Of a DNA stretch of 64,000 bases, positions 1-48,600 are shown one piece after another (the stretch's first letter is position 1; the number at the start of each line of letters is the position of its first letter). The position numbers were made by a program, and so were the translations under genes. The stretch is from Octopus sinensis. Lineage: Eukaryota. The stretch lies in the NCBI RefSeq assembly GCF_006345805.1, contig NW_021833291.1:1-64000 (forward strand), given 5' to 3'. Under the pieces are notes generated by a model. The model did no database searches. It was not told the origin of the DNA and saw only the letters and a list, made by a program, of their open reading frames with translations.

Positions 1-261
1 TCAGCAATATTTACTCTTAAATTATATTTATAATTTTTACTGTCAAATGTTGTGTCTGAGTTCTTTCATTTCTTCCCTGTCAGGATTTTTAAAGTTTATT
101 TAATCTTCTGCTTTGGATTTCTTTTCCTTTCTTTTTTTCTAAATTACCTCCTGTTTTTTGTTGGTTCTTTTTTTTTTAAACACTTTTATTTATTTTTCCC
201 CCTCATCTGATTTATACTCCATTACAGTTTCTGTTTTCATTCAGCCTGTGACTGTTTGATT

Positions 262-1717: not shown

Positions 1718-2127
1718 ATATGTGTGGGTGTGTGTGTGTGTGAGTAAATGTATGAATATATACATACATACATATATATATATATATACATACATATATA
1801 TATGAATATATATATGTGTGTGTGAGTATATGTATGAATATTATATATATATATATATCATGTATATATATGCATATATATGTATGAATAGATATATATG
1901 CATATATATACACATGTATATATATGCAGGAATATATATATGTATGAATATATATATACACATACATATATGTATATATATATATACACACACACACACA
2001 TATATATATGTATACACACACACATATATATGTATACACACACACACATATATATATATATATACACACACACACATATATATATGTATACACACACACA
2101 TATATATGTATACACACACACACACAG

Positions 2128-2158
<31 letters not shown>

Positions 2159-2194
2159 TATATATATATGTATACACACACACACATGTATATA

Positions 2195-2312
2195 CGAGCA
2201 AAACACCCCCTCCCCGCCCAATGGACGGTGCTGAGTTGTCAAACATTTAAACCAAATTTTCTCAAAACAACTTGTCCGACAGTCCCATAGGCCACCCCTT
2301 TGAGAAGCACTG
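2195..2312. mobile_element. Probable right end of a hAT-type MITE (duplicated at ~12135-12262)
   Basis: Ends in tttgagaagcactg, the reverse complement of a CAGTGCTTCTCAAA-type hAT terminus. No left end found. Confidence 0.35.
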
Positions 2313-9853: not shown

Positions 9854-10700
9854 TATATATGTACGTATGTATGCGTGTATGTGTATACATGTGTGTATGT
9901 ATGTACGTATGCATGTACGTACATACGCCTGTGTATGCATGTATGTATGTATGTATGTATGTATGTATGTATATATGTATGTGTGTGTATATGCACGCAC
10001 ACACACTCTATAAAACATAAAGCTATAAACCTGTAGCGATGGATGGATGTAGAGTGACCACTCATCACAAAGCTATCAAATTTCAACTTCCTCCGGGCCG
10101 AAGCTAGAAAGTGAATTTATGACGCTTACTCCCAAAACTATACCCTAAAATCCATTATCAGATTTTTATCTCTATATCACAGAACTATTGTTTTACTATT
10201 GTGCGTATGTATGTATGTATGTGCGTATGTATGTATGTATGTATGTATGTATGTATGTATGTGTGTATGTACATACGTACGCATGTGCGTATGTATGTAT
10301 ACGCGCTTGTATGCCTGTGCCCATGTATGTGTGTGCGTACATGTACGTGTGTATGCCCATACGTAGGTATGTATGTATGTTTGTATTCATGTGCTACGTA
10401 TGTATGTGAGTGTCTAGGAGAATGGGCAGACGTGTCTGTGAGAGTGTGTACATGTGTATGTGTATATGAACGTATGTCCGTGTACCGGCATGTGTCCGTC
10501 CAAGTTGTGTACATGACTGTTACTTTGCTGAAGGTTGTATACATATTCACATATATGTTTGTATAGACGCACACATATATATATATATATATGTGTGGGT
10601 GTGTGTTTGTTCCTCTCATCATCGTCTAACCGTGAATGGATACAACGCCTAAGTGCAACTGTACGTATCAAACAACGTCCGCTCATACCGTTGTATATAA

Positions 10701-12025
10701 CTGCACATACGCATTGCAACCTGTACCAATGAATACCTGTCGCGCAATAACCTTCTATATGCTTGTCCCACCCGTAACAAACGCGGTAGACCACCTACCA
10801 TTACCTCAGCTTACAGGAAGACTCACTGTGAGCGCTGGCAGGGATGGACAAAGCCGGACTACCCACCTTCAAGTGCACACGATATTAGAACCACCATCGC
10901 ACATGCTATCGGTGTCAGCCTGAGATTTACGCTAAAAACACATATTTTTAAACTTGACAACAAACTGTATAAGCAAACGAAAGGCGGTGCTATTGGAGTG
11001 GGGATCGCCGGTGACGTTGCTAACCTCTTCATGGTATGGTGGGACAAGCGTTTTAAACAGTGCCTAGCAAACCGTAACATCCACTTGGCTATGTACTCTC
11101 GTTACGTCGACGACATTAACCTTGTTGTGAAATATAATACAGACACAGTTATGGGCCCTCTACCAAGTGAAGAACAGGTGATGACATCTATACAACACAT
11201 AGCTGACTCTATCCACAGCAGTATAAAACTTACCATAGACTACCCCTCTAAACACCCCAGTAAACGATTACCCGTCCTAGATACTGAGCTATGGATGGAA
11301 GATGCTATGGCTAATGGTACCATTAAACCCTGTATACTCCACTCACACTATCAGAAACCGATGGCTAATCCACTAGTAATCCGTAGTGACTCAGCTATGT
11401 CGGATACTGCCAAACTCAACATCCTAGTGGCAGACTTAGTTAGAGTAATGAGGAATGTATCACCACTATGCCAACCACAAGAACGACAACAACACATCCA
11501 GCACTACATATTCCGAATGCAACGCTCCGGATACACACAAGACGATAGAGTCAGGGTGTACAAAGGAGCGAAAGCTAGATTCGAACGCATTCTAAGGAAC
11601 GACGAAAACGGTATATGCCCCCTGTACCGCAACAAGTTCTGGAATAGGTTAGAGAGGGACACCAACAAAAAGATGAGAAACGTTACTTGGTACGATAACA
11701 GGAGATTTCACGGAGTGATGTTCGTTGACGCCACACCTAAGAACGAGCTAAGTAAGGCATTCAAGAAAGTCCTGCGCACTACGGGCCTAAAAGTTAAAGT
11801 TGTAGAAAAGACAGGTAGGACTATCAAATCGGCATTATGCAGATCATATCCATTTGATAGAATCACCTGTCAAAGTAATTGTGCAGTATGTTCGACAAAT
11901 CCACATGTAAATTGTAAAACCAAGGGCACTGTATACCAGATTAAGTGCCAGGAGGGAGCTTGCGCGACTAACCCAGAGTCATACATAGGTGAGACTTCTA
12001 GAAGCATCAATGATAGGTTCAATGA
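10701..12025 (+). mobile_element. Penelope-like element ORF fragment: reverse transcriptase plus N-terminal half of a GIY-YIG endonuclease
   Basis: The frame of track ORF 10998-12185 is open from 10701. Motifs are LYKQTKGGAIG, RYVDD (11100-11114), LPVLD, SHYQKP, then VYQIKC...[10 protein letters not shown] (11931-12020). It is truncated at ~12025, and the rest of the ORF is microsatellite. Confidence 0.92.
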
Positions 12026-12765
12026 TATATGCAGGAATATATATGTATGCATATATATATATATATATACATATATATATGTATATATACATACACACAT
12101 ATATATATGTATACAAACACACACACACACATATATACGAACAAAACGCCCTCCCCCCCTCTCCCCGTCCAATGGACGGTGCTGAGTTGTCAAACATTTA
12201 AACCCAATTTCCTCAAAACAACTTGTCCGACAGTCCCATAGGCCACCCCTTTGAGAAGCACTGATTTAACCTAAATTTGAGACACCAGCAAAAGAAGAAA
12301 TAAAGATAGACTTTTTTTCTATTCCAAAGAAAAACGATTTTATTCACCCAAATATGCAACCGAAGAGTTTAAAGTACCAGAAATTATAAGTCTGTAGACT
12401 GGGAGAACACAAACATGGAAAATCATTTATTAACAAGAAAATAATATTTTCTTCCTTGAATAAAAAGCAATCTGTGTTTTCTTTTCATTAAAAAATAATT
12501 AAGCATGCCTTTATTTCAATAAAATTTTTGGTTTTGTTAAACGAAATTAAGGCAAAAAAAAAAAGAAAAGAGTTCTTCAGAAACAAAATAGTTTTTCCTT
12601 CCTTCATGCCAAGTTTGGAGAAAATATCTCTTTTGCATCTTACGTTTTTGGTCTCTTAAATATTCTGCATTTTGTGGCATTATTTCAAGCCAGCCGGCTT
12701 TATTGCGCAAACTGCACGTGCAATTTTCTCGCGTACGCATAGTATCGATCGCAACATCTGATGTA

Positions 12766-30930: not shown

Positions 30931-31634
30931 CTGTGCTAGCGGGGTGCAAAGAGCACCATACGAGTGTGGTCGCTGACAGAGCGGCTAACCGGGTTCTTTG
31001 CCAGTGGCACATAAAAGGCACCATTCAAGTGTGATCGTTACCAGCGTCGGCTTACTGGCACTCGAGCCCCGTGCTAGTAGGGTGTTAAGGGCACCATCCG
31101 AGCATGATCGTTGCCAGAGCAGCTATCTGGCCTCCATGCCGATGGCACGTAAAACACACCATTCGAGTGTGATCATTACAGCATTGCCTTACTGGCACCT
31201 ATACCAGTGGCATGTGTAAAAGATTCGAGCGAGGTCATTGCCAGTACTGCCTGACTGGCCCCGTGCCAGTGACACGTAAAAGCACCCACTACAGTTGGGT
31301 GCTGGGGTTGATGTAATCGACTAGACCCCACACCCAAAATTTCAGGCCTTGTGCCTATAGCAGAAAGGATTATTGTTATTATTATTATCTTCAGAATATC
31401 ACCAAAAAAAGATGGGGGCATGGCTGTAAGGTTAAGGAATTCACTTTGCAATCTTGTGGTTTCAGGTTCAGTCCCACTTTGCAGCACCTTAAAGAATTAA
31501 CTTCTTCTAATGTTCCAGGTCGACTCAAGCCTTGTGAGTGGGTTTCGTACATGGAACTGATAAAGCCTATGGTATATACATGTGGGTGTATATTCATGTA
31601 TGCATATCTACATTTGTACTTGTATGTGTATGCA

Positions 31635-31685
<51 letters not shown>

Positions 31686-32630
31686 TATGTCTGCTCATGT
31701 CTCCTTGTCTTGACATCTGCTGCGAATTATAAACAAATGTCACGTCAAACAAACAGAGTCGTTTGTTTGCAGTGTTCCACCAGAAAACATATCCAACCAT
31801 TGTGCTGTTCATGTTGGAAGAACTTGGGGAAATATTCTCTTGCTTGAACCAGGTGAGGATTGGTGACCCTCATCGAGTGTAGTCATAGACTTGACTGAGT
31901 GGGACTCAAGAACCTGGCAAAAAACAAAACAAAATTATTAGAAGGAAAATACAGAAAAGAAATACACCATCTGATGTATTATAAAGGTTTTGATATCCAT
32001 TTTCCCTAACTGGCATGGGTAGGACAGTTGACGAGGAAGCAGTGAACCAGAGGACATTGCTGAGCTCCAATGAAAGATTTGGCAAGATTTCTACAGCTGG
32101 ATGATCTTCTTAACACCAGATGCACACATACACGTGTGTGTGTGTTTATGCATGCATAAGAGTATATGAATGAATAAACATGGGTTTACTTATGTTTGAT
32201 TGCACATCTGATTTTGTATGCTAGCATGGGCTAGGTGAATATATTATTGTAGCCTTGTTTTACAGACAGACAGCCTTCCTATTGCTCACCCAAAACCATT
32301 TTGCAAGAACAAAAGTTCTTATTTCCCATGTCTTCCAAGGTGGGGGTGAATGGTTGACAGATGTTTCTGCTTGGAGCAATTTAAAAGAGATTGCAAACAT
32401 AAACAAATGCACAGACACCTATGCGCACACACACTCAGCTCGAGTTCACTGCTTCCTGTAGCAGAAACAGCTGGAAGCTAATGAAGGTGTCTACGTAACT
32501 CTTGTTCTTTTGTCGTTCATTGATTCATATCTATAAACATACATAGACACAAACATTTATACACGGGTACGTGAAGGTATATTCATATAGTTTCACACGT
32601 GCATTTATGTATATGTGTATGTATGTATAT

Positions 32631-33900
32631 ATCATCATCATGATAATTTAATGTCCTCTTTCCATGCTAGCATGGGTTGGACAATTTGACTGAAGGCTGG
32701 TGAACCAGATGGTTGCACCAGGCTTCAATCTTGATCTGGCAGAGTTTCTACAGCTGGATGCTTTTCCTAACGCCAACCACTCTGAGAGTGTAGTGGGTGC
32801 TTTTACGTGTCACCGGCACGGGGCCAGTCACGCGATACTGGTAATGACCTTGCTCAAATCTTTTACACGTGCCAGTAACGCAATGCTGGTAATTATCAAG
32901 CTCGAATGGCGACTTTTATGTGCCACCGGCATGGAAGCCGGTTAGCCACTCTGTCAACGATCACACTCGTATGGTGCTCTTTGCTCCCCGCTAGCACAGA
33001 TGCCAGTCATCGGATTTGATTTGATTTCACTTGCATCAACAGGTCTTCGCAAGCAGAGTTTTAGTGTCCAAAGAAGGAAGAGGAACGCATAAGTGAGCTG
33101 GTTACGTCCCTGGCATAGGCCCGAGGTTATGTTCTCATGTGGCTTGCCGAGTCTTCTCATGCACGGCATATTTCCAAAAGTGTCTGTCACTAATCATTTC
33201 CTTGGTGAGGCCTAAAGTTCGAAGGTCATGCTTCACCACTTCATCCCAGGTTTTCCTGGGTCTACCTCTTCCACAGGTTCCCTCAACTGCTAGGGTGTGG
33301 CACTTTTGCACACAACTATCTTCAGCCATTCTCGTCACATGACCATACCAGCGCAGACGTCTCTCTGCACACCACAACTGATGCTTCTTAGGTCCAATAT
33401 TTCTCTCAAGGTACTTACACTCTGTCGAGTATGCACACTGACATTACATATCCATCAGATCATACTGGTTTCATTCCTTGCGAGCTTACGCATGTCCTCA
33501 GCAGTCACAGCCCATGTTTCACTGCCAAATAGCATGGCTGTTTGTACACATGCGTCATACAGTCTACCTTTTACTCTGAGTGAGTGGCCCTTTGTCACCA
33601 GCAGAGGTAAGAGCTCTCTGAACTTTGCCCAAGCTACTCTTATTCTAGCAGCTACACTTTCAGCGCACCCTCCCCCACTACTGACTTGGTCACCTAGGTA
33701 ATAGAAGCTATCAACTACTTCTAGTTTTTCTTCCTGGAATGTGGCGAAAGTTGTTCTCTGTGCATTTTCAGTGTTTATTGCACCCGAGAATCTGCCACAT
33801 GCAAAAGCTATCTTCCCAGTTAGCCTTCCTTTGATATTGCTGCACCTCTTATGTGTCCATAGCTTACACTGGGTACATCTTAGAGTTTCTACCCAAACCT
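32631..33900 (-). mobile_element. 5'-truncated, frameshifted RTE LINE (second copy)
   Basis: ORFs 33455-33961 and 33135-33377 match 260-988 (KLEVVDSFYYLG, RRLRWYGH, GRGRPRKTW). They are followed by the repeat-containing 3' UTR and a (GAT)n tail at 32631-32643. Confidence 0.92.
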
Positions 33901-34006
33901 CAACTACAGATCGGGCAGGGCCATCTACCTGAAAGGATTTGTGGTTTGCTTGCCTTCCCACTTATTAGGACTTTGGTTTTAGCTAGGTTGACTCTAAGGC
34001 CCTTTG

Positions 34007-34040
<34 letters not shown>

Positions 34041-35864
34041 TATTTAGCAGAAGTAACAAAGTGACCCAAAATCCAAAAGTTTCGTTTATTAGCATTTATC
34101 AAACTGGTTCTTTGGAGGTATATTCCCAGACCTCCAAACACCACTTTGATGAGTGTCAACTCTTGGACCTTGAGTCCCAACTATCATGCCCCTATCACCC
34201 CTACCTCTATCTTTCATCTCTCAATCCTCTCTCTTCTTCTTCTTTTACTCTACTATCTTACTACTGTGACAAAGATTGGCAGTAAATCTCTTCTCTTCAC
34301 CATTCTTCCAATGAAACTAGGGATGTTACTGGACCTACCTGAGTCTCTCCCCAACACTCAGCCACTCCTTTTCATATATTTATTACCCTAGATCTCTCAC
34401 ACATCCCAGGGTATATGTCACACCCAGAGATTGAGGGGAACCTTTAGTTTGTCAAGGTCATGGCGATTGTCTCTAGCGATGGTACCATAAGATGCACCCA
34501 GTGCACATTGTGCAGTGGTTGGTGTCAGGAAGAGCATCCAGCTGCAGAAAGAAAACCAGAAAATATAACTTCAGGCAAGATATTCTCTGAACCATCCACC
34601 CATTCCAGCATGGAAAGTGGGGGTAAAATGATGATCATCATACATACATACAGATGTATGGATGTATAAATATACATATGTGCATCCTTGTGTATATATT
34701 ATACACATTCATTCTATCATATATACATATATATGTATGTGTATCCTGAAGAAGGTCTCTTTTATTTTTCATTCCTCCTGGGGTCAATAGAGTAACAGTC
34801 ATTATTTCATAGACCAAGGAGGCGGTGGAGGATCATTCTGATGATGATGGGTCACCAGAATATCATTAAACACCCCACCAATATTTCCTAATCCACCTCA
34901 TTAAACCCCCAATACTTCATAATAAAAACCTACACCAAGTTATAACTCCTCACCTAACCACAACAAAACACACTTCACCTGCCAAACCCCTTTTTCATAC
35001 AAACACATCTTTCTCATTGCTACCCAAACATTGTCCCTTATATTAAAGATAATTAAGATGAACCTACCTTTCATTAATTGGGCTTATTCATTAACCAATC
35101 TTTATGATCTCAATCAGCAACAAATAATAACGATCCTCTCAACATGCTGTCTATCAGTGTGATTATATGAAAGCCCATCTTTGGATAAGCTTTCCGAGTT
35201 AATCAATATTGTGTATGATAATTGTGTGGATTATATTGAAATGTCGAGAGATTTACCGCATTTGTCAGGTTAAGAACAGTTTCATCTCCAGCTTTATTCG
35301 TATCTGTTAATCCAGGTAAATATGATGGAAACCAAGCCAACCATGACTGTCCCATCATTAGTAATACTTGTACCTGACAAATGTCTATGAAACATAATAA
35401 AGTCTATGTTTTGCTAATTGTTCCATGTTAACGAAGTTTGAACATGATTGCTGTGTGTTGGGACATAATATAGCATGTACACCAATTAAAGTTAATTTTC
35501 TCTACAGCTTAGAGTGTCTCGTTATTGAGTGCTTTTGGAGCAGGGGAATCTCTTTGACTAATTATCGTTAAATAAATCTAAACCACACATGACTATTTCT
35601 TTGTGATGTTGAGAGCAAATATCATTTCCAGTGAAAATAATTATTTCTAATATTTAGACTCCATGTAATTAATGAAACTTAATACATCTTAGAATAGATT
35701 GTAATAAGTTGTTTAAATATTAATTAGACAAGATTAATTCACTGACAGAAATACATAAATGTTTTGTTTGTGTTTTTCAAATGATGAAGCAAACATCATC
35801 TCCCTGAAACTTCAATATTTTCACAAAGCTAAATGTTTTCCTTATATTTCTTTACAGATTCACT

Positions 35865-38800
35865 ATGGAAGACCAGACTGAAAATACTTTAAGGAAACTT
35901 ATCCCTCAGAAATTGGCTTTGAGTTACTCAACACCAAAATGGGATGAAGAAGGAGTTGACCATCAAAGGTGTAAATATGTGAGAGACGACGGTTCAGGGA
36001 GAGAAATGTCCGAGAAACGAGCTTCATCTCAGCCAACAACAAAACATAAAAGACATAAAGGAGACCCTAAAAACTGGGAAATAATGGGAAGACGAAATAT
36101 TTTTGACAAACACATATTTTATACAAGATTCAATGCCTATGAGGACAAAATTGATTTGTTGATAAATTCTCGGAAAGAAATATGTACTTTTTTAAAAAGA
36201 ATAGGAATGGATGAAAATACTTTTCTAAAACATTTTACACAGAGAATAGAAATTCTGACGAAAGACATTAAAAAAAACGATTACAATCAAGAATTTATAA
36301 TTTTTGGAAAACTAGAATTGTTCCTGGAACACTATTACAAAGAAATATTCTACAAGACAAACACAAAACCATTGAAGCACCAAAAATAATCACAAAATTT
36401 CGGCCTCTTCAGCCAGTTGTGACTAGAGAAGCAAACATTGAGGAATCTGGAGAAGAATTTGAAGAAATCCCAATAATATCCAATATTGTCATCATAGAGG
36501 AGGGAGTGATGACATATTCCCACAATTGCAAGATAATAAGTTTAGTAACAAGAGACAGTGACAGAATTGATGTCCATTGTCCATCTTCTGTGACCAGTTT
36601 CACAAGAATCAGTGAAGACATGGTTCTGGCAACCCTCCCCTTCCATGAAATGATTCTTATTATCAGCCCCAAAACCTTCAAGATCAAAAGGATACAGTTG
36701 GGGTTACATATGGTGAGTTACTTGGAAGATTCTACACTTATAGGTGTAGAAATGTTTGGTAAGATAGTTTACCAATTGATTGGGAGGATAATACCATTAA
36801 CTATCAATTATTACCAAAGAAACCCCTACAGATATTGCTGTAGGGGTCCAGAATATACTTGTAATTACATTCGCCAGCATCAACAGAGTAATCTGTTACA
36901 AACTGGATGGCCAACAGTTATGGGAGGTAGAGACCCATTCTCTGCACCTCCCAAGTAAAATCTCTCTCTACCAAAATTATTTCTATGTCCTCCAGGGACA
37001 AATAATTTATAGGATTTCAGCTAAAGGTGGTGTGACAAGGAGGGACATTGGCAGGAAATGCCGCTCTATTTCTGTTGGTAAAGATACCATTTTGGTAACA
37101 GATTATTGCGGCAAACCACATGGTATTCAAATGAATAAAGACTTTTGGCCCAACCTGTCATACAACCACCAGCTACATACCCCCAGTTTAAAAGACTATA
37201 TTGATATTGAGGATTGCTACAACATTACAAATATTCTACCTATGTCTACATCTTCTATATTAATAATTTACAAAAACAAGAAAGCTAAATTATTCACTGA
37301 TAACGGGGAAATAATTAACCAAAATAATTCAGTTTTCCTTGAGCTTCCTTCTTTCTGTTGTAGAATAAACGCAAACAGATTCCTGGTATTTTATCCTGAA
37401 ATGAAAGGGTTTCAGTATATCACCTGTCCTGAACTAAGAAAAGGCCCTTTAATAAAGGTGCAAACTGGTTACATGAAAATATGTCATATTGTATCAAATA
37501 AGTGTCTAGCTGTGACCACCACTGAAAACAAAAGCGAGGTCCATATCCTCTTGATCAACGAAGATAAAGTTGACATTGCAGAAAGAATTTCTCTGGGACA
37601 TCATAATGTCAGCATTACTGCAACTCCAATTAATTTTGTAGTCGTAGATGGAAACGAAAATAAAATGGTATTTTATTCCACATGTGGTGAAGAACTTTTT
37701 CAAAATTACCTTCCATTCTATGGCTACCCTCATCACATCTACTCTGATAATGTTTATTTCTATGTCCTCTTCAGGAGACACTCTATTCTCAGATGTTATG
37801 ATCTATATGGACAAATGAAATGGCAGTGGGAACTGCCTTTCCCTGTTCACCCTCACATTGCTGTTTTCCAAGGAACTCTTTATGTCCCGGACGCTCAACT
37901 CAACAGGGTTCTTCTTTACAAGTATCAAGACCGGTCGTCTGGCGGTCTTTTACCCATTAAAAATCCTTACATCAGAAATCTAAATCTACGACTCAAAGAA
38001 AAGGAGAATGACCAAAAACTTGTAATTGGCGAAATATGTAATCTGTCCAATGGACAGTTGGTGGTTTCTGACATCAACCATGATTGCTTGTTGTATATTT
38101 CTGAGGAAGGAGACATTGTGTCCAGATTATCTCTGCCGTCTACAGCCACAGATATATGTCGATGGGATTCTAATCATATAGGGGTCACATTACCCCTACA
38201 GAAACAATTAAGGGTCATCGGAAACCTATCAAAGAGAGTGAGAAGTGTATCATTTAGGCAGCCTTATGTACGGGTGTGTAAGATGGGTGAATGTGAAATT
38301 GTTTGTTATTGTGATAAACCATCACATTTAGATATTTTAGCCATCAATTATTATAATCAAGTTGAAGGAATTAAGACAATTAATATCCCTGTGTTTGTAA
38401 AATCATTATCAATAGACAAGAAAACAGAAAAGCTATTAATTGTTACTAGGGGAAAAGCTTTTCAGTACAACACTAGAATAGGTGGTGGTGGTCGTGGAGG
38501 TCGTCAGATGGTTCCCAGTGTTTTAATGTCCCAAGTGAAACGTCCCCTCAGTCTCCAAGGTGGATCTATTGACCAAACGTCTGTTTATCTGATAGACAGA
38601 AGCCGTATGTTTGCCATAAACGATCAGAATTTGTTGGTTAATGATCTCGTTACTAATAATCAACTTAATTATTATATCGACCTGGTGGATGTATTTTCCA
38701 GACACATTTCTCTCAGTGAAATGTTGTCTTCCACTTTATATCTACAGGACCTGACAGTTTCTGATAAAGCCAGACATATTCCTCTCCCTAAACATTTGGG

Positions 38801-41324
38801 AGACAAAGAACCAGCGTGGATTAATCGTTTGGTTCTTACTGAAAATAATCTGATTGCAGGATGGGACGGGGGGAATAGAAACATTAAGATATTCACATTG
38901 GATGGTCACCTTATGGATTCAATCAAAGTGAATGTTTATAGAGATATTAAAATGTGTCGATGGCAGTCAAACACACTGGTCATTACGAATTGGGATTATT
39001 TTGATGATAATAAACACCAACTGTTGACATTAAAAGTGGAATTTCCATTGTCGTTGGTAATTTACAAAACGAGAAATAAATATAAATGTGTGGCTTCTTT
39101 ATCAAACAATCAATTGGTTTTGAGTGAAAGTGGAGATGTAAGACGTTTGCATTTTGTTGATATTGATGAAATACATTCGAATGTGAAGGAAATAAAAAAA
39201 ATAGACATACCTGAACCATTAATAAGGAGAAGAGAAGATGGAGATTATTCTGATATAATCCGGGATATTAAAGTTACTGATGAAGATGTCATCATTGTCT
39301 TAAACTGGAGATTCATCATTTTCTTCAACAGTGGTGGTCAATATTTACATTCAGTCAGACACTACATGGAGGATTATGTTGGTGTTGACACGATGACAAT
39401 CGATGACAGTTTTTTGTACATTTATGGTTATTGGGAGAAATATTTAGGTTCAACTGGATATAAAAACATTTTGTGTTTGACCCAGAATGGGGAATACAAG
39501 AGAATATTTTTAAATAAAAGGATTTATAAAGATGAAGTAGAATTCTCCAGTATAGACTGTAAAGGACCAAGGTTTGTTGGAAGCCCCAGGATGGGAAGGA
39601 GAGAGAATGAATTGTATGTTGAAGGGTTGTTTATGGTGAATCGAGACAGCTTCCCGGTTGCTCGTTTACAAACAGACGAATGTCCTGTTCAAGTAAAAGA
39701 TTTTGATGTCTCTGAGGAAGGAAAGACAGTTGTGTGTGAAAAAGCCAATAATGGAAATGTTAAAATATTCGATGAAGACGGCCAGTTGCTATGTCACAGA
39801 AATGTTGCAAGTTTAGTTGGTGGTGTGTGTTTTACACAAGAATCACACATAATGGCCACGGTTCCTAAAAGGAAAGAAATATTTCAACTGAATGGAGAAG
39901 ATTTGCAGACATCTCAAGTTTGGTCGAGTCTCATCCCTTATGGTGTAATATGGAGAAAAGTGGCGGGTATTTACTGGTGTGTACATAATGAATTGATTGA
40001 ATGTCATTGCATAAAGATTGATGGGGACCAAGTGAACATTCTGGAATCTGTGTCGTCATTAAATCTTGATTCTGGTCTTCGTTTCCCTTCCATTACATCT
40101 GAAACGAACAAGGAAATATTCAGTAATGAATTAATTAATAAATTGGAATACAGAGGAGGAGATGGAGATGGAGGAGGAAGAAGAAGAGGTAAATCAGGTG
40201 AAATAATTGGTAAAGGTAGATTAAAGGTGAGATGTGGTAATTACATAGCGGAGATTAATAATTCAGGAATTGATGAAATATCAGTGAGGAGACTTCCATA
40301 TAGGACAGCAATGGTCCCTTTTTCCATTCCTGCATTCGAGGAACCTGTTGATTATGATTTGAGGGACATTAGGGACCGGAACAGTAAACTAATTAAGTTA
40401 GATGAGAATGTGAGTGTGTTGATGTTTCGAGAAAGTGTCACATTAATCAGAACAACAACAACAACAACAGTGGACATACTTCAACATGAACAACAACAAC
40501 GACCACCACTGGACATATGTCGGTGGACAGAGGAATGTTTCATTGTCGCCTTTGGGAGAGAAATGAGGGTCTTCAACAGGGATCTCCGTCGTTTAAAAAC
40601 CATCAGAACTGAGAAATACTACAACAGGATTTATAAATACAACGACAATCAACTCGTGTGTGGTGGTCATTATATTAGAGACATAACTCAAGAAGAGAGA
40701 CACAAGAAATACAAAAGAATATGGAGAAACAACAAGTATTACTATTATTGCAAAGACCCTGACATCTTTGACCCTTATTATGTGGATGTGGTTGATTTTG
40801 AAGATGGGAAATGTAAAGATGAAGTGTGTCGTGGGAAGATGGGGAGATATGGAAGGTTTGAGGGAGATGAAGGGGTGGATGATGTGGGAGTCACATCTTT
40901 TGGTGATGTTGTTGTTGTGAGGTGGGAGATGAAGGAGGAGCAGTGGTCTGGATCGGGGGATATTTTGTGTTTTGTGGAATGGTTCAGGGAAAAGTCTTTG
41001 GTGAGGAGGATAAGAATAGAAGGAGGAAGGTTTTATGTTCTGGAAGAATATATTCCAAGACCTCGTCTGACCATAATTGGTGAATGTGTTTATATAACAG
41101 ATACAAGAAACAATATTTACGAAATACCTCGACATATTGAAGAGGAAACATCTGAAGATGATGAAATCCTGGGATTAAAAGATAATCCAAAATATTTACT
41201 CCTCAGACGGGATGATAATGAAGTCTCTGAAGTTCTTGGTTTGGATGTTTCAGACAATTCTTTGATGGTTTTTGGAATTATTCCTGGACCTCAATCTTTT
41301 GCTTTCTTTTATTTTGACAAATAA
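35865..41324 (+). CDS. Single-exon ~1820-codon protein: helical N-terminus plus about six tandem NHL/TolB-like beta-propellers, interrupted by 2-3 frameshifts (assembly error or recent pseudogene)
   Basis: Acceptor tttctttacAG lies just before ATG 35865. The three track ORFs overlap: frame 0 35865-36389, the -1 frame open 36272-36958, and frame 0 open again 36801-41324 (1507 codons). Blade motifs recur (PTDIAV, GQLVVSDINHDCL, TLYVPDAQLNRV, D/M-x-CRW at 38151, 38952 and 40512). Confidence 0.8.
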
Positions 41325-41325
41325 A
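41320..41325 (+). terminator. Candidate polyadenylation signal overlapping the stop codon
   Basis: AATAAA at 41320-41325 overlaps the TAA at 41322-41324. Confidence 0.35.
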
Positions 41326-41724
41326 TATTTCCAGAAATATTAAACTTCAATCTTCTTCTTCTTATTATTGTTGTTGTTGTTGTAAATGGCTTCGCCCGGG
41401 AATCGAACCTGCATCGCATACATTGCATTCTACACACTAACACTTATTGTTGTAACATTCCTCAACACTCTCTCTTTGTGTGTGTGTGTATATTTATGTA
41501 CAGTATATGTACATGTGTTTATATATATATACACACATATTTAGGAATGTATGTATAGAAATAAGGCTATAAGTATGTATGTTTGTGTGTGTATATGTGT
41601 ATGTGTATATATATATATATATATATACGCATGCATGTATGTATAGGAATGTCTGGTCCGAAAGCAGAGACTTTCATAATCATTGATCCTCCATTAAAAG
41701 GCAGACGACAACCGCCGCCGCCTC

Positions 41725-41756
41725 CACCATCATCATCATCATCGTCGCCATCATCG

Positions 41757-41802
<46 letters not shown>

Positions 41803-41827
41803 TATCATCATCATCATCGTCGTCATC
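41725..41827. repeat. (TCA)n trinucleotide microsatellite
   Basis: About 33 imperfect units seen directly. Confidence 0.95.
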
Positions 41828-42006
41828 AGCGTTGTGTGTGCGTGTGTGCAGTCTGCATCTGACAGTTTTTAACGTTTAATAAGAATAGATTGTTGTTGTT
41901 GTTGTTGTTGCAGTGACATTCCAACTGCACACACGCACAAACATTGCCTTTCGTCCTCGTAGGGTTGTTGTTGTTGTTGTTGTTGTTGGGGGTTCATAAA
42001 AAAAGA

Positions 42007-42350
42007 GAAGGACACTTTAAGAAGCATTCAGTAAAAGCTTTCCCATAGCTGGTCATTTTTCATGCTAGAAATAGAAACCACTTTACTTTTCATATAAAAT
42101 TTGAAGGACAGATAAGAAGCATTCATAAATAAAATTGACCTGTATATGGTCTCATTTCATGCTAGAAAGAGCCACAAAAACCTTCACATTTTTGTTTCAT
42201 CACAAATAAAAATCGAAGGACAATTTGCAAAGCATCCATGTCAAATATTGTCCTATAGATGGCCTAACATCATGCTAGAAATAACAGCCAAATACTCTGA
42301 AATTTGTATCGTTTGTCATAAAAAAAGTGAAGGACACTTTAAGAAGCAAC
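42007..42350. repeat. Degenerate ~100-115 bp tandem repeat, 3.2 copies
   Basis: gaaggaca...aagca recurs at 42007, 42103, 42215 and 42329. Each full unit contains catgctagaaa. Confidence 0.75.
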
Positions 42351-42988
42351 TCCGAAAATATTGTCCTGCGGCGATTTAAGTGTAAAATATTATAAAAGTA
42401 TGCATCTATGAGTTTTATGTGTTTAAAAAACATAGCAAAGACCTGTGTGTATATGTAGGTATATACATGTGTATAAAGGTATTTTTGCATAAAAATGGGT
42501 ATTTTTGAATGAAATTTGGTAGAAATAACTTTCAAGCGATGCAGATTACGATTAAAAAGAAATTTGTTGGCAAAATGTTTTGTAAGGGTTCGAGGGAAAA
42601 AGTGTGTGATTTAAGGGAGATTTGGCTGTTGTTTCTAGCACACCACCCTCCTTGTCTTCTTTTTTTTATCATTTTTTCCCTGAGAAACACATTTATGTTA
42701 TAAAAAAATAAAAAGAATATTTTAAAAATCTCTGATTATTTTTAGCCCCACTTCCTGGCCCCCAATTCTTTCTCTTTATATAATTGTAAAATATTGGAGA
42801 GCCTGAGAAGATTCTTGTTGGGATTTATCCACAGGGATTTAAATAAGAGCTTTGTAAAAGAGGATTTCTTTTGAGAGCATGCTTTTTTGTTAGAAAATGA
42901 AAGTGGAAGTTTCATTAAAAATATCCATTTTCCTGGAAGTTATGAGGAAACAAAGTCGATGGGGTGTTCATCTGTAGTTATGCCACAG

Positions 42989-43029
<41 letters not shown>

Positions 43030-43249
43030 CTGTAGAAATGTAGGTGTGTATATATATATATTATATGTATGTGTGTTTGTGTATACATTTATTCATGTAT
43101 ATGTACAAGTTTAAAAAAGAAATATCAAAAGATGTTGGAATATTTGAGGTATTGGATAATTTCCGACTCAGGATTGCCAATACATTTATATAGGAATATA
43201 AATATACATCATTATTATACGTAGCCTTCTTGCACACACATAAGCATAC

Positions 43250-43292
43250 CTCGAAGAAAAGACGACGGGTAAATCCATCTGTGACAACCCAT
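43250..43292 (-). CDS. Candidate first coding exon (MGCHRWIYPSSFLR, phase 1) of a - strand gene; 5' UTR probably extends to ~43380
   Basis: ATG in aagcATGG context and a strong donor GAG/GTATGC at 43250/43249, about 100 bp downstream of an X-box. Confidence 0.5.
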
Positions 43293-43395
43293 GCTTAAGG
43301 GTGTCTGGTGATATTTCTGGTCTGGTATCACACAAACCGCCCAGTCTGGAGTCTCTCTATAACTTCTGCCGCTTCCCGTTCAATTGTTTCTACTT

Positions 43396-43450
43396 GTTGC
43401 CTAGCAACGCTAATTTGAATGACAAAAAACGTGGAGAAAAAGGCGGGAAA
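43396..43450. promoter_or_regulatory. Promoter-like region: RFX X-box (43396-43408) and E2F-type site (43442-43450)
   Basis: GTTGCCTAGCAAC matches the RFX X-box consensus and GGCGGGAAA matches the E2F consensus. Local GC/CpG content is raised in non-repetitive DNA. Confidence 0.6.
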
Positions 43451-43912
43451 TTTAGACAAAACTTTGTCTAAATTAATTATTTAAAATCAAAGAGACATTG
43501 TCAGCATTTTTATGAATTAAATAATGTTAAAAGACATTAAGGTCTCACAATTAAGTCATTAATTAGGAATTATAATTAATTTGGACGTGAAAAAGAAAGG
43601 AAAACTAACGGATGTGTGTATATGTATGTATTTATGTATGTACATAAGCAGGTAAATATTTATATATGTAAGTGTGTATGAATATTTACATACGTCTATA
43701 GAGAGAGAAAGGGGGAGAGAGAGGGTGGAGTATTACACATGTATACACATAAGACGAATGATGTCTGGGGTGTGTATCGGTGTGTCTGTGTGTGTGTATA
43801 CACGCCTGTTTATGTTTGTGCGTGTGTGTGTATTTATGTGTGATGTGTGTGGTGTGTGTGTATCCGGGAACGTCACTTTCTGCTTCTGCCTCTCTCTATA
43901 TCTGACTGTCTC

Positions 43913-43969
<57 letters not shown>

Positions 43970-43974
43970 ATATA

Positions 43975-44043
<69 letters not shown>

Positions 44044-44173
44044 GTCTGTTTGACTCTCTCCCCTATCTATCTACCCATCTCTCTCTCTCTATCTGTCTAT
44101 CTTTTTATGAATATCTATCTATTTAGCATATATATATATTATATATATATATATATATTATATATATATATAT

Positions 44174-44528
44174 CCTTTTACTCTTTTACTTGTTTCAGTC
44201 ATTTGGCTGCGGCCAAGCTGGAGCACCGCCTTTAATCGAGCAACTCGATCCCGGGACTTTTTCTTTTGTACGCCTAGTACTTATTCTATCGGACCGTTTT
44301 GCCGACCCGCTAGTAACGGGGACGTAAACATCGGTTGTCAAACACAGACACACTCATATATATATATAAATATATACGACGGGCTTCTTTCAGTTTCCAT
44401 CAAACAAATCCACTCACAGGGCTTTGGTCGGCAATAGTAGAAGACACTTGCCCAAGATGCCACGCAGTGGGACTGTACCCGGAACCATGTGGTTGGTAAA
44501 CAAGCTACTTACCACACAGCCACTCCTG
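44174..44528 (-). mobile_element. SINE family 1 copy
   Basis: Reverse complement of 57127-57498. Confidence 0.85.
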
Positions 44529-44651
44529 CGCCTACACACATACACACACACACATACATATATATAATATTAATTAAGGGTAGAAATTGATATTTATCAA
44601 TTAAGACCAGTGGTCTAGCATATTAAAAAAGAATCCGAAGATTAAAATATT

Positions 44652-44858
44652 TATATATACCAATTGAGGACTGAACACGAAAAGTGGACAGTCAACATGC
44701 TAGATATAGACGTCAAATCGACATTCTCCACAAAAGATTATGTTCTCAGATCAAACTCACCAAGTTTGTACTGGGAACATAATCTTTTGTGGAGAATGTC
44801 GATTTCACGTCTATATCTAGCATGTTGACTGTCCACTTTTCGTGTTCAGTCCTCAATT

Positions 44859-44868
<10 letters not shown>
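44652..44868. repeat. Near-perfect inverted repeat (arms 44652-44749 / 44771-44868, 21-nt loop), probably PLE pseudo-LTR derived
   Basis: Arms are reverse complements with about 2 mismatches. The unpaired left extension (44570-44650) loosely resembles the termini at 13980-14045 and 30870-30930. Confidence 0.9.
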
Positions 44869-44925
<57 letters not shown>

Positions 44926-45399
44926 GTCTGTATTTAACTCTCTCACTTTGTCTTTATCTACAACAACCTCCACTCTGTACCAGTGTCTGGGGTTTGGTTG
45001 TTTATGGAAGTAGTATGTTTAACAAGGAGTGTTTCAGCCTCCCATTCTACTACTGAGTCCTCAAGACACACACACACACACACATGCAAACAATCCAACA
45101 CGTACACACCCACGTCGTTCAGTGATGGAAAGGGACGTCCGTCCTATTTGTGCAGATGTGAGGCAATCCTTTTACTCAATATAGAAAGAGAAATAAGGAA
45201 ATAGATTTCCTTCTCTACCTCTGCCTTGTCATGGATTTGAACGCGAATCCACAGGAAACCAACTCGCAGAATTATAACACGCGTTTTATACATACATTCA
45301 CCAATATAAACACATGCAGCCACAAGTACACAGTCATATACAAAACATATGTGTACGTCTCTCTGCTTGTGGCCATATTACGTGTATATCTATGAGATA

Positions 45400-45648
45400 T
45401 TGAGTCGGTGTATAATTATTGCGGCTATTTTTCAACAAATTTTATTCAACAAAAACAATAACAATATTTAACAAAAACATCTTTGAATGACGGTCTGACC
45501 GTCTGCCAAGCAAATAGGAAGCAGTAATTGAAGGAGATGGTGAATATGCTCCGGAATAATCATTTAAGATGTTTTTATTGCATGTTGTTATTGTTTTTGT
45601 TGAATGAAATTTGTTGAAAAAAGCCGCAATAATTATGCACCAAGCCAA
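45400..45648 (+). mobile_element. Internally deleted mariner element (MITE) with TA target duplication
   Basis: TIRs ttgagtcggtgtataattattgcggc / gccgcaataattatgcaccaagccaa resemble mariner TIRs and are flanked by TA on both sides. The interior encodes RLPSK*EAVIEGDGEYAPE*, the mariner transposase C-terminus. Confidence 0.85.
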
Positions 45649-48600
45649 TATGTATATAACAAGATAGAATGAACAAACATTTTCGGCCTCTATTCTAGGA
45701 CTCAACCAAGTAGAAACACACACTGATCGATCGATAGGTAGACAGATAGAGAGAAAGAGAGGGAGAGATGGATAGACAGACAGAAGACAGATACATAGAT
45801 AGACGCAGGAGTGGCTGTGTGGTACGTAGCGTGCTTACGAACCACATGCTTCCGGGTTCAGTCCTGCTGCGTGGCACATCTGTAGCCTTGGGCCAACCAA
45901 AGCCTTGTGAGTGGATTTGGTAGACGGAAACAGAAAGAAGCCCGTCGTATATATATATATGTATACATAGACAAACACACGTGTAAGCATACGCACGCAC
46001 GCACACACACACGTAAGTTTATGCAAGTATTTATATACTTGCATACACCTATATAATTATGGCTCTGGTAACATCCTCACAATGAGATTCATAGAAATGT
46101 TGTCGCTAAATCCTGTGCATCACAGGCTGCAACAGTTACCATTCTCTCACTCCACATCGACAGACATGTCTCACCTGCACACTTCATCCTATCAACAACT
46201 TCCAACAGAAAATGCCTTCCTTTTATGCGTTGCATCTCTCCTGAATTCTTACATGTGCAACCAGTAAACATTTTAAAAAGTTTAGTCAGCATTTAAACCT
46301 AGTCTTGTCGACTGCAGTTTTTGTGCCTCTAGCAACAAACAGCTCTCCTAAGAGATTTCCTATTCCACTTACGAGAGGCGATTCAAGTCTTTCAGAACCA
46401 GCTCCCCTGCAATTCTTGACTTCGTCCCTTGAGGCAGAGGTTAGGACTCACCTAAAAGACACAAGTGAACGTCTGGAAACAGCAGTCTATATCTGACCAA
46501 CTCAGACTGGTTTGCCAGCTCCAAAAGGCAACGAAAAATGCTCATTTTCTAACAATTCACCCAACAGTGAATCAATATTCTTTATTTAATATCGTCACCT
46601 ATTTCTTAACGTCTCCATTTTCCTGGTGTATATATTTTATCGCCTGCCGTCTTCTTTCTATCGTTTAAACACAGCAGACACGGCAGAATCGTATCGAAAA
46701 CTGTTCAGAAGTATTTCAGGAGGAAAAAAGAAAGCAAAGCCACCTCAGTGATCAAAAGCAAAATCTATTCAAACAAACCTAAAACATACAAGTCACCATA
46801 CGACATTATGTGATGTAATATAGTTTTGTGTATAGAAAGTATTAGATTTGATGTGGACCTTGTTGTTAATGACAACCAGTGTGTTATGTATTCTTTTGGT
46901 TCGTGGTGAGATAATAAACAACTCACTGAAGGCATTTTTATGATTCTACCCGTTTCTTTACTTGGCATGTTCACAAACTGTAAATGACACAGGTCATACT
47001 GCTTACTAGATGCGCTTAACAAAATAGTACTAATAGTGGGGATGTATTCATATATACGTATATCTACGCATACACATAGATATGAACGTGTAACATTAAT
47101 AAACACCCACTTTACAATTATCTAAAGTGTGTATACATTCGCGTGGGGGACACCCTGTATATATACATGTACAACAGGCTACTTTCAGTTTCTAAGAAGT
47201 TATAATAGAAAATACTTGTTTGTGGTGTCAGCAGTGAAACGCCTGCACCCGTGTGTGTGTGTGTGTTAAATAGTGTCCTTCCTTTTATAAAAAACATTTG
47301 TTTGTCCACATACAAACTTTCTTAGGTAGTTCCGTGTAACTTTATCAGATGAGGGGGAAATACTCTGGTTTTCCACGTGATTTCTATCCCTTGACTAATT
47401 CCAATTTGACCGTTTTTTTTTGTCTTTCTTGAAATATTTTCCATTCGTACATTTGACAGTCTACATCATCATCATCATCATCACCACCACAATCATCATC
47501 ATCATCACCCACCACCACCACTACCATCATCGTACTTTAGGTTCATTTCTTTCGTTGCAAAACTCGTGGCTTATTTTTATTCCAGTTTTTTGTTTTTTTA
47601 TCATTATTCTCTAAGTCAAGGAGGTGAGCTGGCAGAATCATTAGCATTCTGGACAAAATGCTTAGCGATATTTCGCTCATCGCTACGTTCTGAGTTCAAA
47701 TTTCACTGAGGTCGACGTTACCTTTCATTATTTTGGGGTTGATAAATTAAGTACCAGTTGAGTACTGGGGGTCAATGTAATCGACTATGCCCCTCCCACA
47801 AATTTCAGGCTTTCTGCCTATAATAGACAGGATCATTATTCACTAAGTCCTACAGGAAACAGTTTTATCATCATTAAAATAGAAAGAAGTTTGAAAGAAT
47901 GCATTTACAATGCTAAGTACAGAAGAATTTATTGTAAAAAATCTTTAGCCAACATCTTAAAGGTATTTAAAAATGGGAAAATAAACTAAAAAGTAACCTA
48001 AAGTAATCTCCGTTTAGGTCGTGGATCCCATGCCAGAGTAACACCAGGCAGGGTTTAAAGGCAGTTTGATATCACTGAACGATATCACACAGCAGTGTAA
48101 AAAAAACAGATGCAAAAAAAATAGATACATCAAACCAAATGCTAAAGCATGAAGTCTGTAACATCCTTCGGTTCCTGCAACTGACTCTTCAATAAACATT
48201 CGCTTTCTGTTGACCTCTCATTTGAACCCAGGTGCGTAGGACTAGCCTACCTCAGCCGACACAAGAACACAAACATTCTCTATACTATAAACAATAATGT
48301 ATGGCCCGGGTAACTATGTACCTCCTCTACTGAAACACACCTGTTTCTGTCTCAGTGTAAGCTTTCATCATCTGACACAAGATCATCTCCTCCAATGTCC
48401 CCTCCCTTCTCAAAGGACCTTTGTCTTCCAAGTCACTTGGTGGCCCTGCTAGCACTGGTGCCATGTGAAAAGCATTCAGTCCACACTGTGTAGTGGTTGG
48501 CATTTGGAAAGGCATCAAACTGTGAGAACCTTGCCAAAACTGACCTCGCCTGTGCTTGTGCCATGTAAAAAAAGGTCCACTCTGCTGGGTGATTGGTTTT

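What the first reader, a model, noticed from the sequence alone, without database searches (positions are those of the whole stretch)
35865..41324. Giant intronless protein made of about six tandem NHL-like beta-propellers
Seen: approximate repeat units of 220-320 aa lie at 36465-37130, 37200-37930, 37960-38750, 38770-39630, 39650-40300 and 40350-41321. They share an I..I..L..G.+++.D..N..+.+F...G start, and three carry a CRW motif. Gly/Thr/Gln runs occur in loops, and no signal peptide, TM helix, RING or B-box is evident. Established: molluscan TRIM-like proteins carry a single C-terminal NHL-type propeller after a coiled coil, and NHL domains bind RNA or protein ligands. Inference: a coiled-coil remnant plus a six-propeller array in one exon is an unusual architecture. 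It could be a multivalent cytosolic recognition or RNA-binding scaffold, possibly from a cephalopod-specific family. This is the most striking coding feature in the window.
Basis: partly seen in the sequence, partly recalled or inferred. Interest (0 to 1): 0.75.

Follow-up and report, generated by a model that had tools for sequence, protein, structure and literature searches.

The report
Octopus six-unit NHL-propeller gene copy
This is one, apparently broken, copy of an uncharacterised multi-copy gene family found only in octopuses and argonauts, encoding ~1,800-residue proteins of six diverged NHL-type beta-propeller units in a row; the architecture is unusual and the function is unknown.

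Summary
The six repeat units, the shared start motif and the three CRW motifs are real. Profile comparison links all six units to one another. Each also matches the single C-terminal NHL propeller of molluscan RING/B-box proteins at 96.6-99.4% hhalign probability, and that outgroup matches solved TRIM2, TRIM3, TRIM71 and Brat NHL domains. AlphaFold models are almost entirely beta-strand, and Foldseek returns only multi-propeller proteins. Confidence is low to moderate, and blade counts are firm only for some units. Pfam sees nothing in the family.

The gene belongs to a family of at least 60 protein clusters, found only in Octopus species and Argonauta. Most O. vulgaris copies lie on one 29-Mb chromosome and spread by segmental duplication. 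Intact relatives have a single-exon coding sequence.

The window copy is not one open frame. Three 1-bp deletions, at about 36335, 36775 and 36807 and absent from five relatives, split it into ORFs of 174, 179 and 1430 codons. It is either a very young pseudogene or a local assembly error.

No evidence links the N-terminal helices to a TRIM coiled coil. Function was not tested. The best guess is a RING-less, multivalent cytosolic binding scaffold. I class it as a new variant of a known fold, of moderate interest.

The parts
35838..35857 (+). Polypyrimidine tract plus AG (ttccttatatttctttacag), a possible 3' splice acceptor 7 nt upstream of the ATG
   Evidence: Read directly. The same sequence precedes the ATG in the related copies L003, L004rc and L004b. 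No transcript evidence.
35865..36335 (+). N-terminal region in frame 3: a hydrophilic, probably disordered stretch followed by a helical segment; window-type N-terminus
   Evidence: ORF 35865-36389. 83-92% identical to the N-termini of P0016, P0017, P0012, P0007 and P0003. In P0016, residues 1-80 are disordered and four helices span 81-166 at pLDDT 41-64. No similarity to TRIM RBCC regions.
36335..36336 (+). Frameshift 1: 1-bp deletion (TATATA in relatives, TATTA here); frame 3 to frame 2; the original frame then stops at 36387-36389
   Evidence: DNA alignments to L001, L002, L003, L004rc and L004b; tblastn frames.
36455..37193 (+). Unit 1 (NHL-like propeller unit), interrupted by frameshifts 2 and 3
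   Evidence: hhalign versus outgroup NHL profile 98.1% over 184 columns. 23 strands at pLDDT 70-85 in the model of the intact relative P0016.
36775..36776 (+). Frameshift 2: 1-bp deletion (TTT to TT); frame 2 to frame 1
   Evidence: alignment; frames.
36807..36808 (+). Frameshift 3: 1-bp deletion (TTT to TT); frame 1 back to frame 3, after which 1430 codons stay open
   Evidence: alignment.
37194..37949 (+). Unit 2 (NHL-like propeller unit)
   Evidence: hhalign versus outgroup 96.6% over 208 columns. 23 strands at pLDDT 76-89 in the P0016 model. Boundaries.
37950..38759 (+). Unit 3 (NHL-like unit with CRW at 38157), ending in a short helical linker
   Evidence: hhalign versus outgroup 99.1%. 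19 strands plus helices in both models. CRW position.
38760..39644 (+). Unit 4 (NHL-like unit with CRW at 38955); the unit most similar to TRIM-NHL proteins and one of the most variable among family copies
   Evidence: HMMER match to P0083 (RING + B-box + NHL), profile 273-510, E 4.8e-7. hhalign 99.4%. 23 strands. 70% mean identity among close copies.
39645..40331 (+). Unit 5 (short unit, about 3-4 modelled blades plus a Gly-rich disordered loop); nearly identical among close copies
   Evidence: hhalign versus outgroup 96.9% over 136 columns, but it also matches WD40 controls at 90-94% over 58 columns. 12-15 strands. 90% mean identity, and a stretch with no differences at all from L001.
40332..41321 (+). 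Unit 6 (NHL-like unit with Thr and Gln runs and CRW at 40518); variable among copies
   Evidence: hhalign versus outgroup 98.5% over 217 columns. 26 strands, with parts at pLDDT 80-91. 73% mean identity among close copies.
41322..41324 (+). Stop codon TAA, overlapped by AATAAA (41320-41325)
   Evidence: Read directly.
31292..47101 (.). Segmental-duplication block that carries the gene
   Evidence: Collinear blastn matches at 93-98% to L001 (O. vulgaris OX597841.1) well beyond the coding sequence.

Best explanation
Window 35865-41324 holds one copy of an uncharacterised gene family restricted to octopods (Octopus species and Argonauta). Intact members are proteins of about 1,660-1,910 residues encoded by a single coding exon. 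They have a variable, disordered N-terminus, a short helical segment, and then six diverged NHL-type beta-propeller units in tandem.

[quoted passage not shown] This is shown by homology. The order of events is inferred.

The family has multiplied by segmental and tandem duplication, mostly on one O. vulgaris chromosome. It evolves under weak purifying selection with gene conversion. The N-terminus, U4 and U6 vary most. U2, U3 and U5 are kept nearly constant.

The window copy carries three clustered 1-bp deletions that break the frame. It is either a very recently inactivated pseudogene or a locally mis-assembled intact gene.

The mechanism is inferred, not tested. With no signal peptide, TM segment or RING, the protein most likely acts as a non-catalytic, multivalent cytosolic scaffold. 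Its propeller faces would bind protein or RNA ligands. The variable propellers would give different copies different specificities.
For: Family and distribution: 57 hits, all Octopus or Argonauta; the same with the family profile; an exhaustive HMMER search found only Octopus or Argonauta proteins among those checked, down to E 1e-19.

Single-exon coding sequence in intact relatives.

Six related units.

NHL homology: RING/B-box/NHL proteins are the first outgroup hits; every unit matches the outgroup profile at 96.6-99.4%; the outgroup matches TRIM2, Thin, TRIM3, TRIM71, Brat and Mei-P26 structures; NHL chains make up most of the sub-threshold PDB hit lists for the family profiles that include U3-U6.

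Fold: models are almost all-beta, U1 and U2 reach pLDDT 70-89, and Foldseek returns multi-propeller proteins at E 1e-15 to 1e-25.

Segmental duplication and tandem neighbours.

Selection: omega 0.57-0.88, with stretches showing no differences; per-unit variability.

Frameshifts unique to the window.

No signal peptide, TM, RING or B-box.
Against: Pfam's NHL model does not reach threshold on any member. The best is 18.5 bits against a cut-off of 20, for the divergent member P0062. Direct profile searches against solved structures are not significant, with E at least 0.017.

The outgroup used was selected by similarity to U3-U6, so only the U1 and U2 results are independent of that selection.

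AlphaFold confidence is low to moderate: mean pLDDT 58 and 63, pTM 0.44 and 0.35. U5 is short and also matches WD40 controls.

Unit charges are unremarkable (pI 4.9-8.9), which gives no support to RNA binding.

There is no expression, localisation or ligand evidence of any kind.
Confidence: 0.6

Rival explanations
1. The window copy is an intact, functional gene, and the three 1-bp deletions are assembly or polishing errors in a recently duplicated, hard-to-polish region.
For: All three are deletions at short A/T runs, clustered within 475 bp, and they sum to -3. Against its closest relative L003, the window has only deletions (1, 1, 1 and 3 bp) and L003 has none. Of the 26 window-specific substitutions in the whole gene, the 21 that fall in the long ORF split 10 synonymous to 11 nonsynonymous, against a random expectation of about 21% synonymous. 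This suggests constraint until very recently. No stop codon occurs in 1430 codons.
Against: The runs are only 2-3 bases long, which is not the classic long-homopolymer error context. Other copies in a public assembly (L003, L005, L004rc) also carry frameshifts, so pseudogenes are common in this family. With only 21 lineage-specific substitutions, about one stop is expected, so its absence is weak evidence.
Confidence: 0.4
2. The units are generic or WD40/YWTD-like propellers, not NHL-type. The NHL resemblance would then be convergent blade-level similarity.
For: Foldseek's best matches are WD40 and YWTD multi-propeller proteins. U5 and partly U4 match WD40 control sequences at 83-94%. Pfam NHL is below threshold.
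Against: Whole-chain Foldseek ranking favours any multi-propeller target and cannot type single domains. WD40 and DUF5122 controls score below 4% for U1, U2, U3 and U6. The longest and best matches, about 200-230 columns, are to RING/B-box/NHL proteins. The start-of-unit motif, including ICxW...VTLP, is shared with the cuttlefish TRIM-NHL-like propeller.
Confidence: 0.1
3. The repeats do not form six separate closed six-bladed propellers. Some units are partial, and blades are shared or form a different higher-order beta assembly.
For: U3 models with 19 strands and U5 with 12-15, against 23-26 for U1, U2, U4 and U6. U3 and U5 align to only about 3-3.5 blades' worth of the outgroup profile. pTM is 0.35-0.44.
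Against: Unit lengths of 229-328 residues are in the range of solved six-bladed NHL domains, 277-307 residues. The low-confidence segments may hide further blades. All six units align in register from the first blade.
Confidence: 0.25
4. The ORF is cargo of, or encoded by, a mobile element, and its copy number reflects transposition rather than host gene duplication.
For: It is multi-copy, with a single-exon coding sequence and many broken copies. Some gene models are fused to zinc-finger or DUF4371 domains. The window is rich in retroelement fragments.
Against: Similarity between copies extends collinearly for at least 15 kb beyond the coding sequence, interrupted by different repeat insertions. 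No transposase, integrase or reverse-transcriptase domain lies in or next to the gene. Copies are concentrated on one chromosome in local clusters. The propellers' relatives are host TRIM-like genes.
Confidence: 0.04

Closest known systems
Molluscan RING/B-box proteins with a C-terminal NHL propeller (e.g. Acanthosepion pharaonis CAE1315789.1 = P0083; Mytilus galloprovincialis VDI39367.1 = P0093)
   Same: These are the nearest sequence relatives outside the family: HMMER E 4.8e-7 over about 230 residues, hhalign up to 97-99%. They share the first and second blade pattern, including I-C-x-W ... V-T-L-P.
   Different: They have one propeller after RING, B-box and helical regions, in about 620-860 residues. 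The octopod family has six propeller units, has no RING or B-box, and has an unrelated N-terminus.
TRIM-NHL proteins (TRIM2, TRIM3, TRIM71/LIN-41, Brat, Mei-P26, Thin)
   Same: NHL-type six-bladed propeller, linked by transitive homology through the molluscan outgroup. They lead the sub-threshold PDB lists for the family profile. Their NHL domains bind RNA or proteins (abstracts of PMC4015489 and PMC5908797, seen).
   Different: They have a single NHL domain and act with an RBCC E3-ligase module. No direct significant sequence match exists (E at least 0.035). There is no evidence here for RNA binding.
Multi-propeller scaffolds (DDB1, IFT-A subunits, Utp21, LRP2/LRP4/LRP6)
   Same: Several beta-propellers sit on one chain. 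These are the best Foldseek matches, at E 1e-15 to 1e-25, so the architectural analogy to a multivalent scaffold is reasonable.
   Different: They use WD40 or YWTD propellers, 2-3 per cytosolic protein, or are extracellular with EGF spacers (LRPs). Global TM-scores are only 0.1-0.25. No sequence homology was shown.
Other NHL-repeat proteins (NHLRC2, teneurin NHL domain, PknD sensor and Pizza designs)
   Same: Same propeller superfamily. They are hit by the outgroup profile.
   Different: They have a single propeller in unrelated domain contexts.

Membership tests
NHL-repeat beta-propeller (Pfam PF01436) | Sequence reaches the curated Pfam NHL threshold | tested here: not met
   No Pfam hit for the window ORFs or for 15 family members. 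The best is 18.5 bits against a cut-off of 20, for the divergent member P0062.
NHL-repeat beta-propeller (Pfam PF01436) | Detectable homology to bona fide NHL domains | tested here: met
   Exhaustive profile search: RING + B-box + NHL proteins at E 4.8e-7 to 6.5e-4 over about 230 residues. All six units match the outgroup propeller profile at 96.6-99.4%. The outgroup matches solved TRIM2, TRIM3, TRIM71, Brat and Thin NHL domains at E 1e-35 to 1e-21. The link is transitive, and for U3-U6 the outgroup was selected by similarity.
NHL-repeat beta-propeller (Pfam PF01436) | Six four-stranded blades closing into one propeller | tested here: inconclusive
   Strand counts are 23 (U1), 23 (U2), 19 (U3), 23 (U4), 12-15 (U5) and 26 (U6). 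Mean pLDDT is 58-63. No coordinates were available to verify closure.
TRIM / RBCC family | N-terminal RING finger | tested here: not met
   No RING hit in the window ORFs or in intact relatives.
TRIM / RBCC family | B-box zinc finger | tested here: not met
   No B-box hit.
TRIM / RBCC family | Coiled-coil following the B-box | tested here: inconclusive
   Four low-confidence helices are predicted at 81-166 of P0016. hhalign against RBCC regions of four TRIM-like outgroup proteins gives at most 1.3% probability. No dedicated coiled-coil predictor was run.
WD40 propellers | Match to WD40 repeat models | tested here: not met
   No WD40 Pfam hit at threshold. WD40 control sequences score below 4% for U1, U2, U3 and U6, but 83-94% over short stretches for U4 and U5.

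The most novel reading that the evidence does not exclude
Octopods evolved a private, rapidly duplicating repertoire of RING-less six-propeller NHL proteins. In these, constant propellers (U2, U3, U5) would form a common platform. Variable propellers (U4, U6) and a swappable N-terminus would give each copy a different ligand specificity. This would be an intracellular recognition system, for example for viral or transposon-derived proteins or RNAs, built from a TRIM-NHL sensor domain that has lost its ligase.
Probability: 0.15. Interest if true: 0.7.

Novelty: new variant of a known kind. Interest (0 to 1): 0.45.

Why it matters
The NHL propeller is a well-known ligand-binding module that normally occurs once per protein, attached to an E3-ligase or other effector part. 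Here it is repeated six times on one chain with no recognisable effector. The family is large, octopod-only and invisible to Pfam, and the databases list its members only as 'uncharacterized protein'.

It adds a candidate to the short list of octopod-specific gene expansions. It gives a clear case of domain-architecture innovation: a TRIM-like ancestor becoming a multi-propeller scaffold. Its pattern of variable and constant propellers makes a testable prediction about which parts carry specificity.

For this window the practical message is that the copy is broken or mis-assembled and should not be annotated as an intact 1,790-residue protein without checking the reads.

Tried and rejected
- Pfam on the window ORFs and on up to 15 relatives found nothing.
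- Direct family-profile searches of solved structures gave only sub-threshold hits. These were NHL chains for profiles that include U3-U6, and helical proteins for the N-terminus.
- A second word-indexed search with the family profile added no distant relatives.
- Whole-model Foldseek cannot type single propellers, because multi-propeller chains dominate the ranking.
- The idea that the N-terminus is a TRIM coiled-coil remnant was rejected for lack of any similarity.
- The transposable-element reading was rejected because similarity between copies extends collinearly into at least 15 kb of flanks and no element enzymes are present.
- The annotated upstream 5-nt first exon of P0016 lies in the flank of an inverted neighbouring copy and looks like a gene-model artefact. 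It is not evidence for a 5' exon.
- Literature searches by family features and by six LOC identifiers found no description of the family.
- Unit pI and charge gave no hint of nucleic-acid binding.
- The window's exact source could not be established. No fetched locus is identical to it. The closest proteins and loci are from O. vulgaris, at 93-97%.
Full report
**What is in the sequence.**
The + strand between 35865 and 41324 carries three ORFs of 174, 179 and 1430 codons in frames 3, 2 and 3. tblastn with intact relatives shows one gene read as frame 3, then 2, then 1, then 3. There is no second copy in the window. DNA alignments to five related loci show why the frame changes. The window lacks single bases at about 36335/36336 (TATATA in relatives, TATTA here), 36775/36776 (TTT to TT) and 36807/36808 (TTT to TT). 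None of the relatives shares these deletions. After the first deletion the original frame stops at 36389. After the third deletion the frame is restored and stays open to the TAA at 41322-41324.

**The family.**
The long ORF has 57 database relatives at E = 0 to 1e-193. All are 'uncharacterized' or 'hypothetical' proteins of Octopus vulgaris, O. sinensis, O. bimaculoides and Argonauta hians. Full-length members are 1,660-1,914 residues.
- At least 29 of the 57 clusters lie on one 29.19-Mb O. vulgaris record (OX597841.1). Copies sit at about 7.1, 9.6, 10.2 and 21.9 Mb, and some are direct neighbours.
- A search with the family profile added nothing outside octopods.
- An exhaustive HMMER scan of 1.84 billion representative proteins found family members and fragments down to E 1e-19. 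All those checked are from Octopus species.
- A divergent member, about 30% identical, lies on another chromosome and is present in three Octopus species (P0062/P0097).
- Intact members P0001 and P0022 have coding sequences that exactly fill their gene spans, so each is a single coding exon.
- Pfam recognises nothing in the window ORFs or in 15 members.
- I found no paper describing the family.

**Six units.**
A self-comparison of the family profile gave internal matches. In window coordinates the units are U1 ~36455-37193, U2 37194-37949, U3 37950-38759, U4 38760-39644, U5 39645-40331 and U6 40332-41321. The unit starts align to a common first and second blade pattern. CRW occurs three times, in U3, U4 and U6, and the Gly, Thr and Gln runs are present.

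**Are the units NHL propellers?**
Direct tests are weak. Pfam NHL is below threshold. Family profiles against solved structures give only E of 0.017 or more, although NHL chains (TRIM71, Brat, TRIM2, TRIM3, Thin) fill most of those lists.

The decisive evidence is indirect. In the exhaustive search of U3-U6, the first proteins beyond the family include:
- P0083, a cuttlefish protein with RING, B-box and NHL, at E 4.8e-7, aligned over profile positions 273-510;
- P0084, with B-box and NHL, at E 2.6e-6;
- P0094, with RING and B-box, and P0093, a Mytilus B-box protein;
- several short NHL-only proteins.

A profile of these outgroup propellers matches every unit: U1 98.1%, U2 96.6%, U3 99.1%, U4 99.4%, U5 96.9% and U6 98.5%, over 136-217 columns. 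U1 and U2 were not part of the query that selected the outgroup, so those two results are independent. The outgroup alignment in turn hits solved NHL domains very strongly: TRIM2 at 3.8e-35, then Thin, TRIM3, TRIM71, Brat and Mei-P26.

The controls argue for specificity but are not clean. WD40 and DUF5122 sequences score below 4% for U1, U2, U3 and U6. They reach 83-94% over short stretches for U4 and U5.

**Predicted structure.**
- The model of window residues U3-U6 (1112 aa) has mean pLDDT 58 and pTM 0.44. It is almost entirely beta-strand, and its best parts are U4 and U6.
- The model of the intact relative P0016, residues 1-981, has mean pLDDT 63. Residues 1-80 are disordered and four helices span 81-166 at low confidence. 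U1 and U2 reach pLDDT 70-89.
- Strand counts are 23, 23, 19, 23, 12-15 and 26 for U1 to U6. This fits six four-stranded blades for U1, U2, U4 and U6, about five for U3, and three to four for U5.
- Foldseek against the PDB returns only multi-propeller proteins (IFT-A subunits, DDB1, LRP2, LRP4, Utp21) at E 1e-15 to 1e-25, with low global TM-scores.
- This supports 'several propellers on one chain'. It cannot say which propeller type, and I could not inspect coordinates to confirm closure.

**N-terminus.**
Two N-terminal types exist. The window has the P0016/P0022 type, and P0001 has the other. Their helical parts are homologous to each other, at 99.8%. Neither type resembles the RING/B-box/coiled-coil region of the outgroup, at 1.3% or less. 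Intact relatives have hydrophilic N-termini and no convincing TM segment.

**How the copies arose and evolve.**
Similarity between the window and L001 runs collinearly from 31292 to 47101 at 93-98%, far beyond the coding sequence. This indicates segmental duplication, not retroposition or transposition.

One region within that block, 35360-36356, is not alignable. It holds the 5' end and the N-terminal codons, and there the two copies carry different N-terminal types. This is a mosaic pattern.

Pairwise omega is 0.57-0.60 for deeper comparisons and 0.69-0.88 for recent ones. Some stretches of hundreds of codons show no differences at all between copies, mainly in U5, which points to gene conversion.

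Among close copies, mean identity is 0.50 for the N-terminus, 0.77 for U1, 0.87 for U2, 0.89 for U3, 0.70 for U4, 0.90 for U5 and 0.73 for U6. Other copies (L003, L005, L004rc) also carry frameshifts. This is a birth-and-death family.

**Status of the window copy.**
Two readings remain.
- For a real but very young pseudogene: broken copies are common in the family, and the deleted runs are short.
- For local assembly error: all three changes are deletions at A/T runs, clustered within 475 bp. The window shows only deletions against its 97%-identical relative. Its 21 lineage-specific substitutions in the long ORF are 10 synonymous to 11 nonsynonymous, which looks constrained.

I cannot decide between them without reads. 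I put the odds near even.

**Function.**
Nothing was tested, so this is inference. The protein lacks secretion or membrane signals and any catalytic or ligase domain. It consists of six modules of a fold that is known to bind RNA or proteins on its faces. The variable and constant pattern among propellers suggests a common platform plus specificity-bearing modules. The most likely role is therefore a multivalent cytosolic binding scaffold. Unit charges give no specific support for RNA binding.

**Comparison with known families, and verdict.**
It works like, and descends from, NHL propellers. It is not a TRIM protein, since RING and B-box were tested and are absent. It fails Pfam's own NHL threshold. 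The tandem six-unit, effector-less architecture and the octopod-restricted expansion are new relative to what the libraries and papers available here describe. I class it as a new variant of a known kind, of moderate interest. The main corrections are the broken frame, the unsupported coiled-coil link, the uncertain blade counts for U3 and U5, and the narrower (octopod, not cephalopod) distribution.

Noticed in passing
window 10998-12185 (+): This 395-codon ORF has a reverse-transcriptase YVDD motif and a C-terminal GIY-YIG-like '[13 protein letters not shown]' motif. It looks like a fragment of a Penelope-like retroelement. The motifs are recognised from my own knowledge; Pfam gave no hit at E <= 0.01.
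   Followed up: partly
window 260-988 (+) and 33455-33961 (-): Two visibly similar ORFs share '...WTHKRCSN.KGRLT...LEVVDSF.YLGDQVSSGGGCAESV...'. They look like tails of a non-LTR retrotransposon ORF2-type protein. Only weak PHD and C1 hits were found.
   Followed up: partly
window 35360-36356 versus L001 9228-10442: The 5' end and first ~160 codons of the gene are not alignable by blastn between two copies whose flanks on both sides are 93-98% identical. The two copies carry different N-terminal types, which suggests cassette-like exchange or conversion of the N-terminus among family copies.
   Followed up: partly
window 41385-41420: 'ggcttcgcccgggaatcgaacctgcatcg', just 3' of the stop codon, resembles a tRNA T-arm in reverse and may be a tRNA-derived SINE fragment. 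ARAGORN finds no tRNA gene anywhere in the window.
   Followed up: partly
window 41728-41828, 43909-44174, 31640-31684, 44861-44923: Microsatellites: (CAT)n, (TCTA)n, (GT)n and (TA)n. Several long 'ORFs' elsewhere in the window (1563-2246, 10185-10622) are translations of TG/TA-rich simple repeats, not genes.
   Followed up: no
L004 2778-9839 (-), 10001-32927 (+), 38182+ (+): In O. vulgaris, an inverted, frameshifted copy of the gene lies directly upstream of P0016, and P0017 follows about 5 kb downstream. The 5-nt first exon of the P0016 gene model lies in the inverted copy's flank and looks like an annotation artefact.
   Followed up: partly
window 40593-41135 (-): This 180-codon antisense ORF lies inside unit 6. 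It has no support and is most likely a by-product of the coding strand's composition.
   Followed up: no
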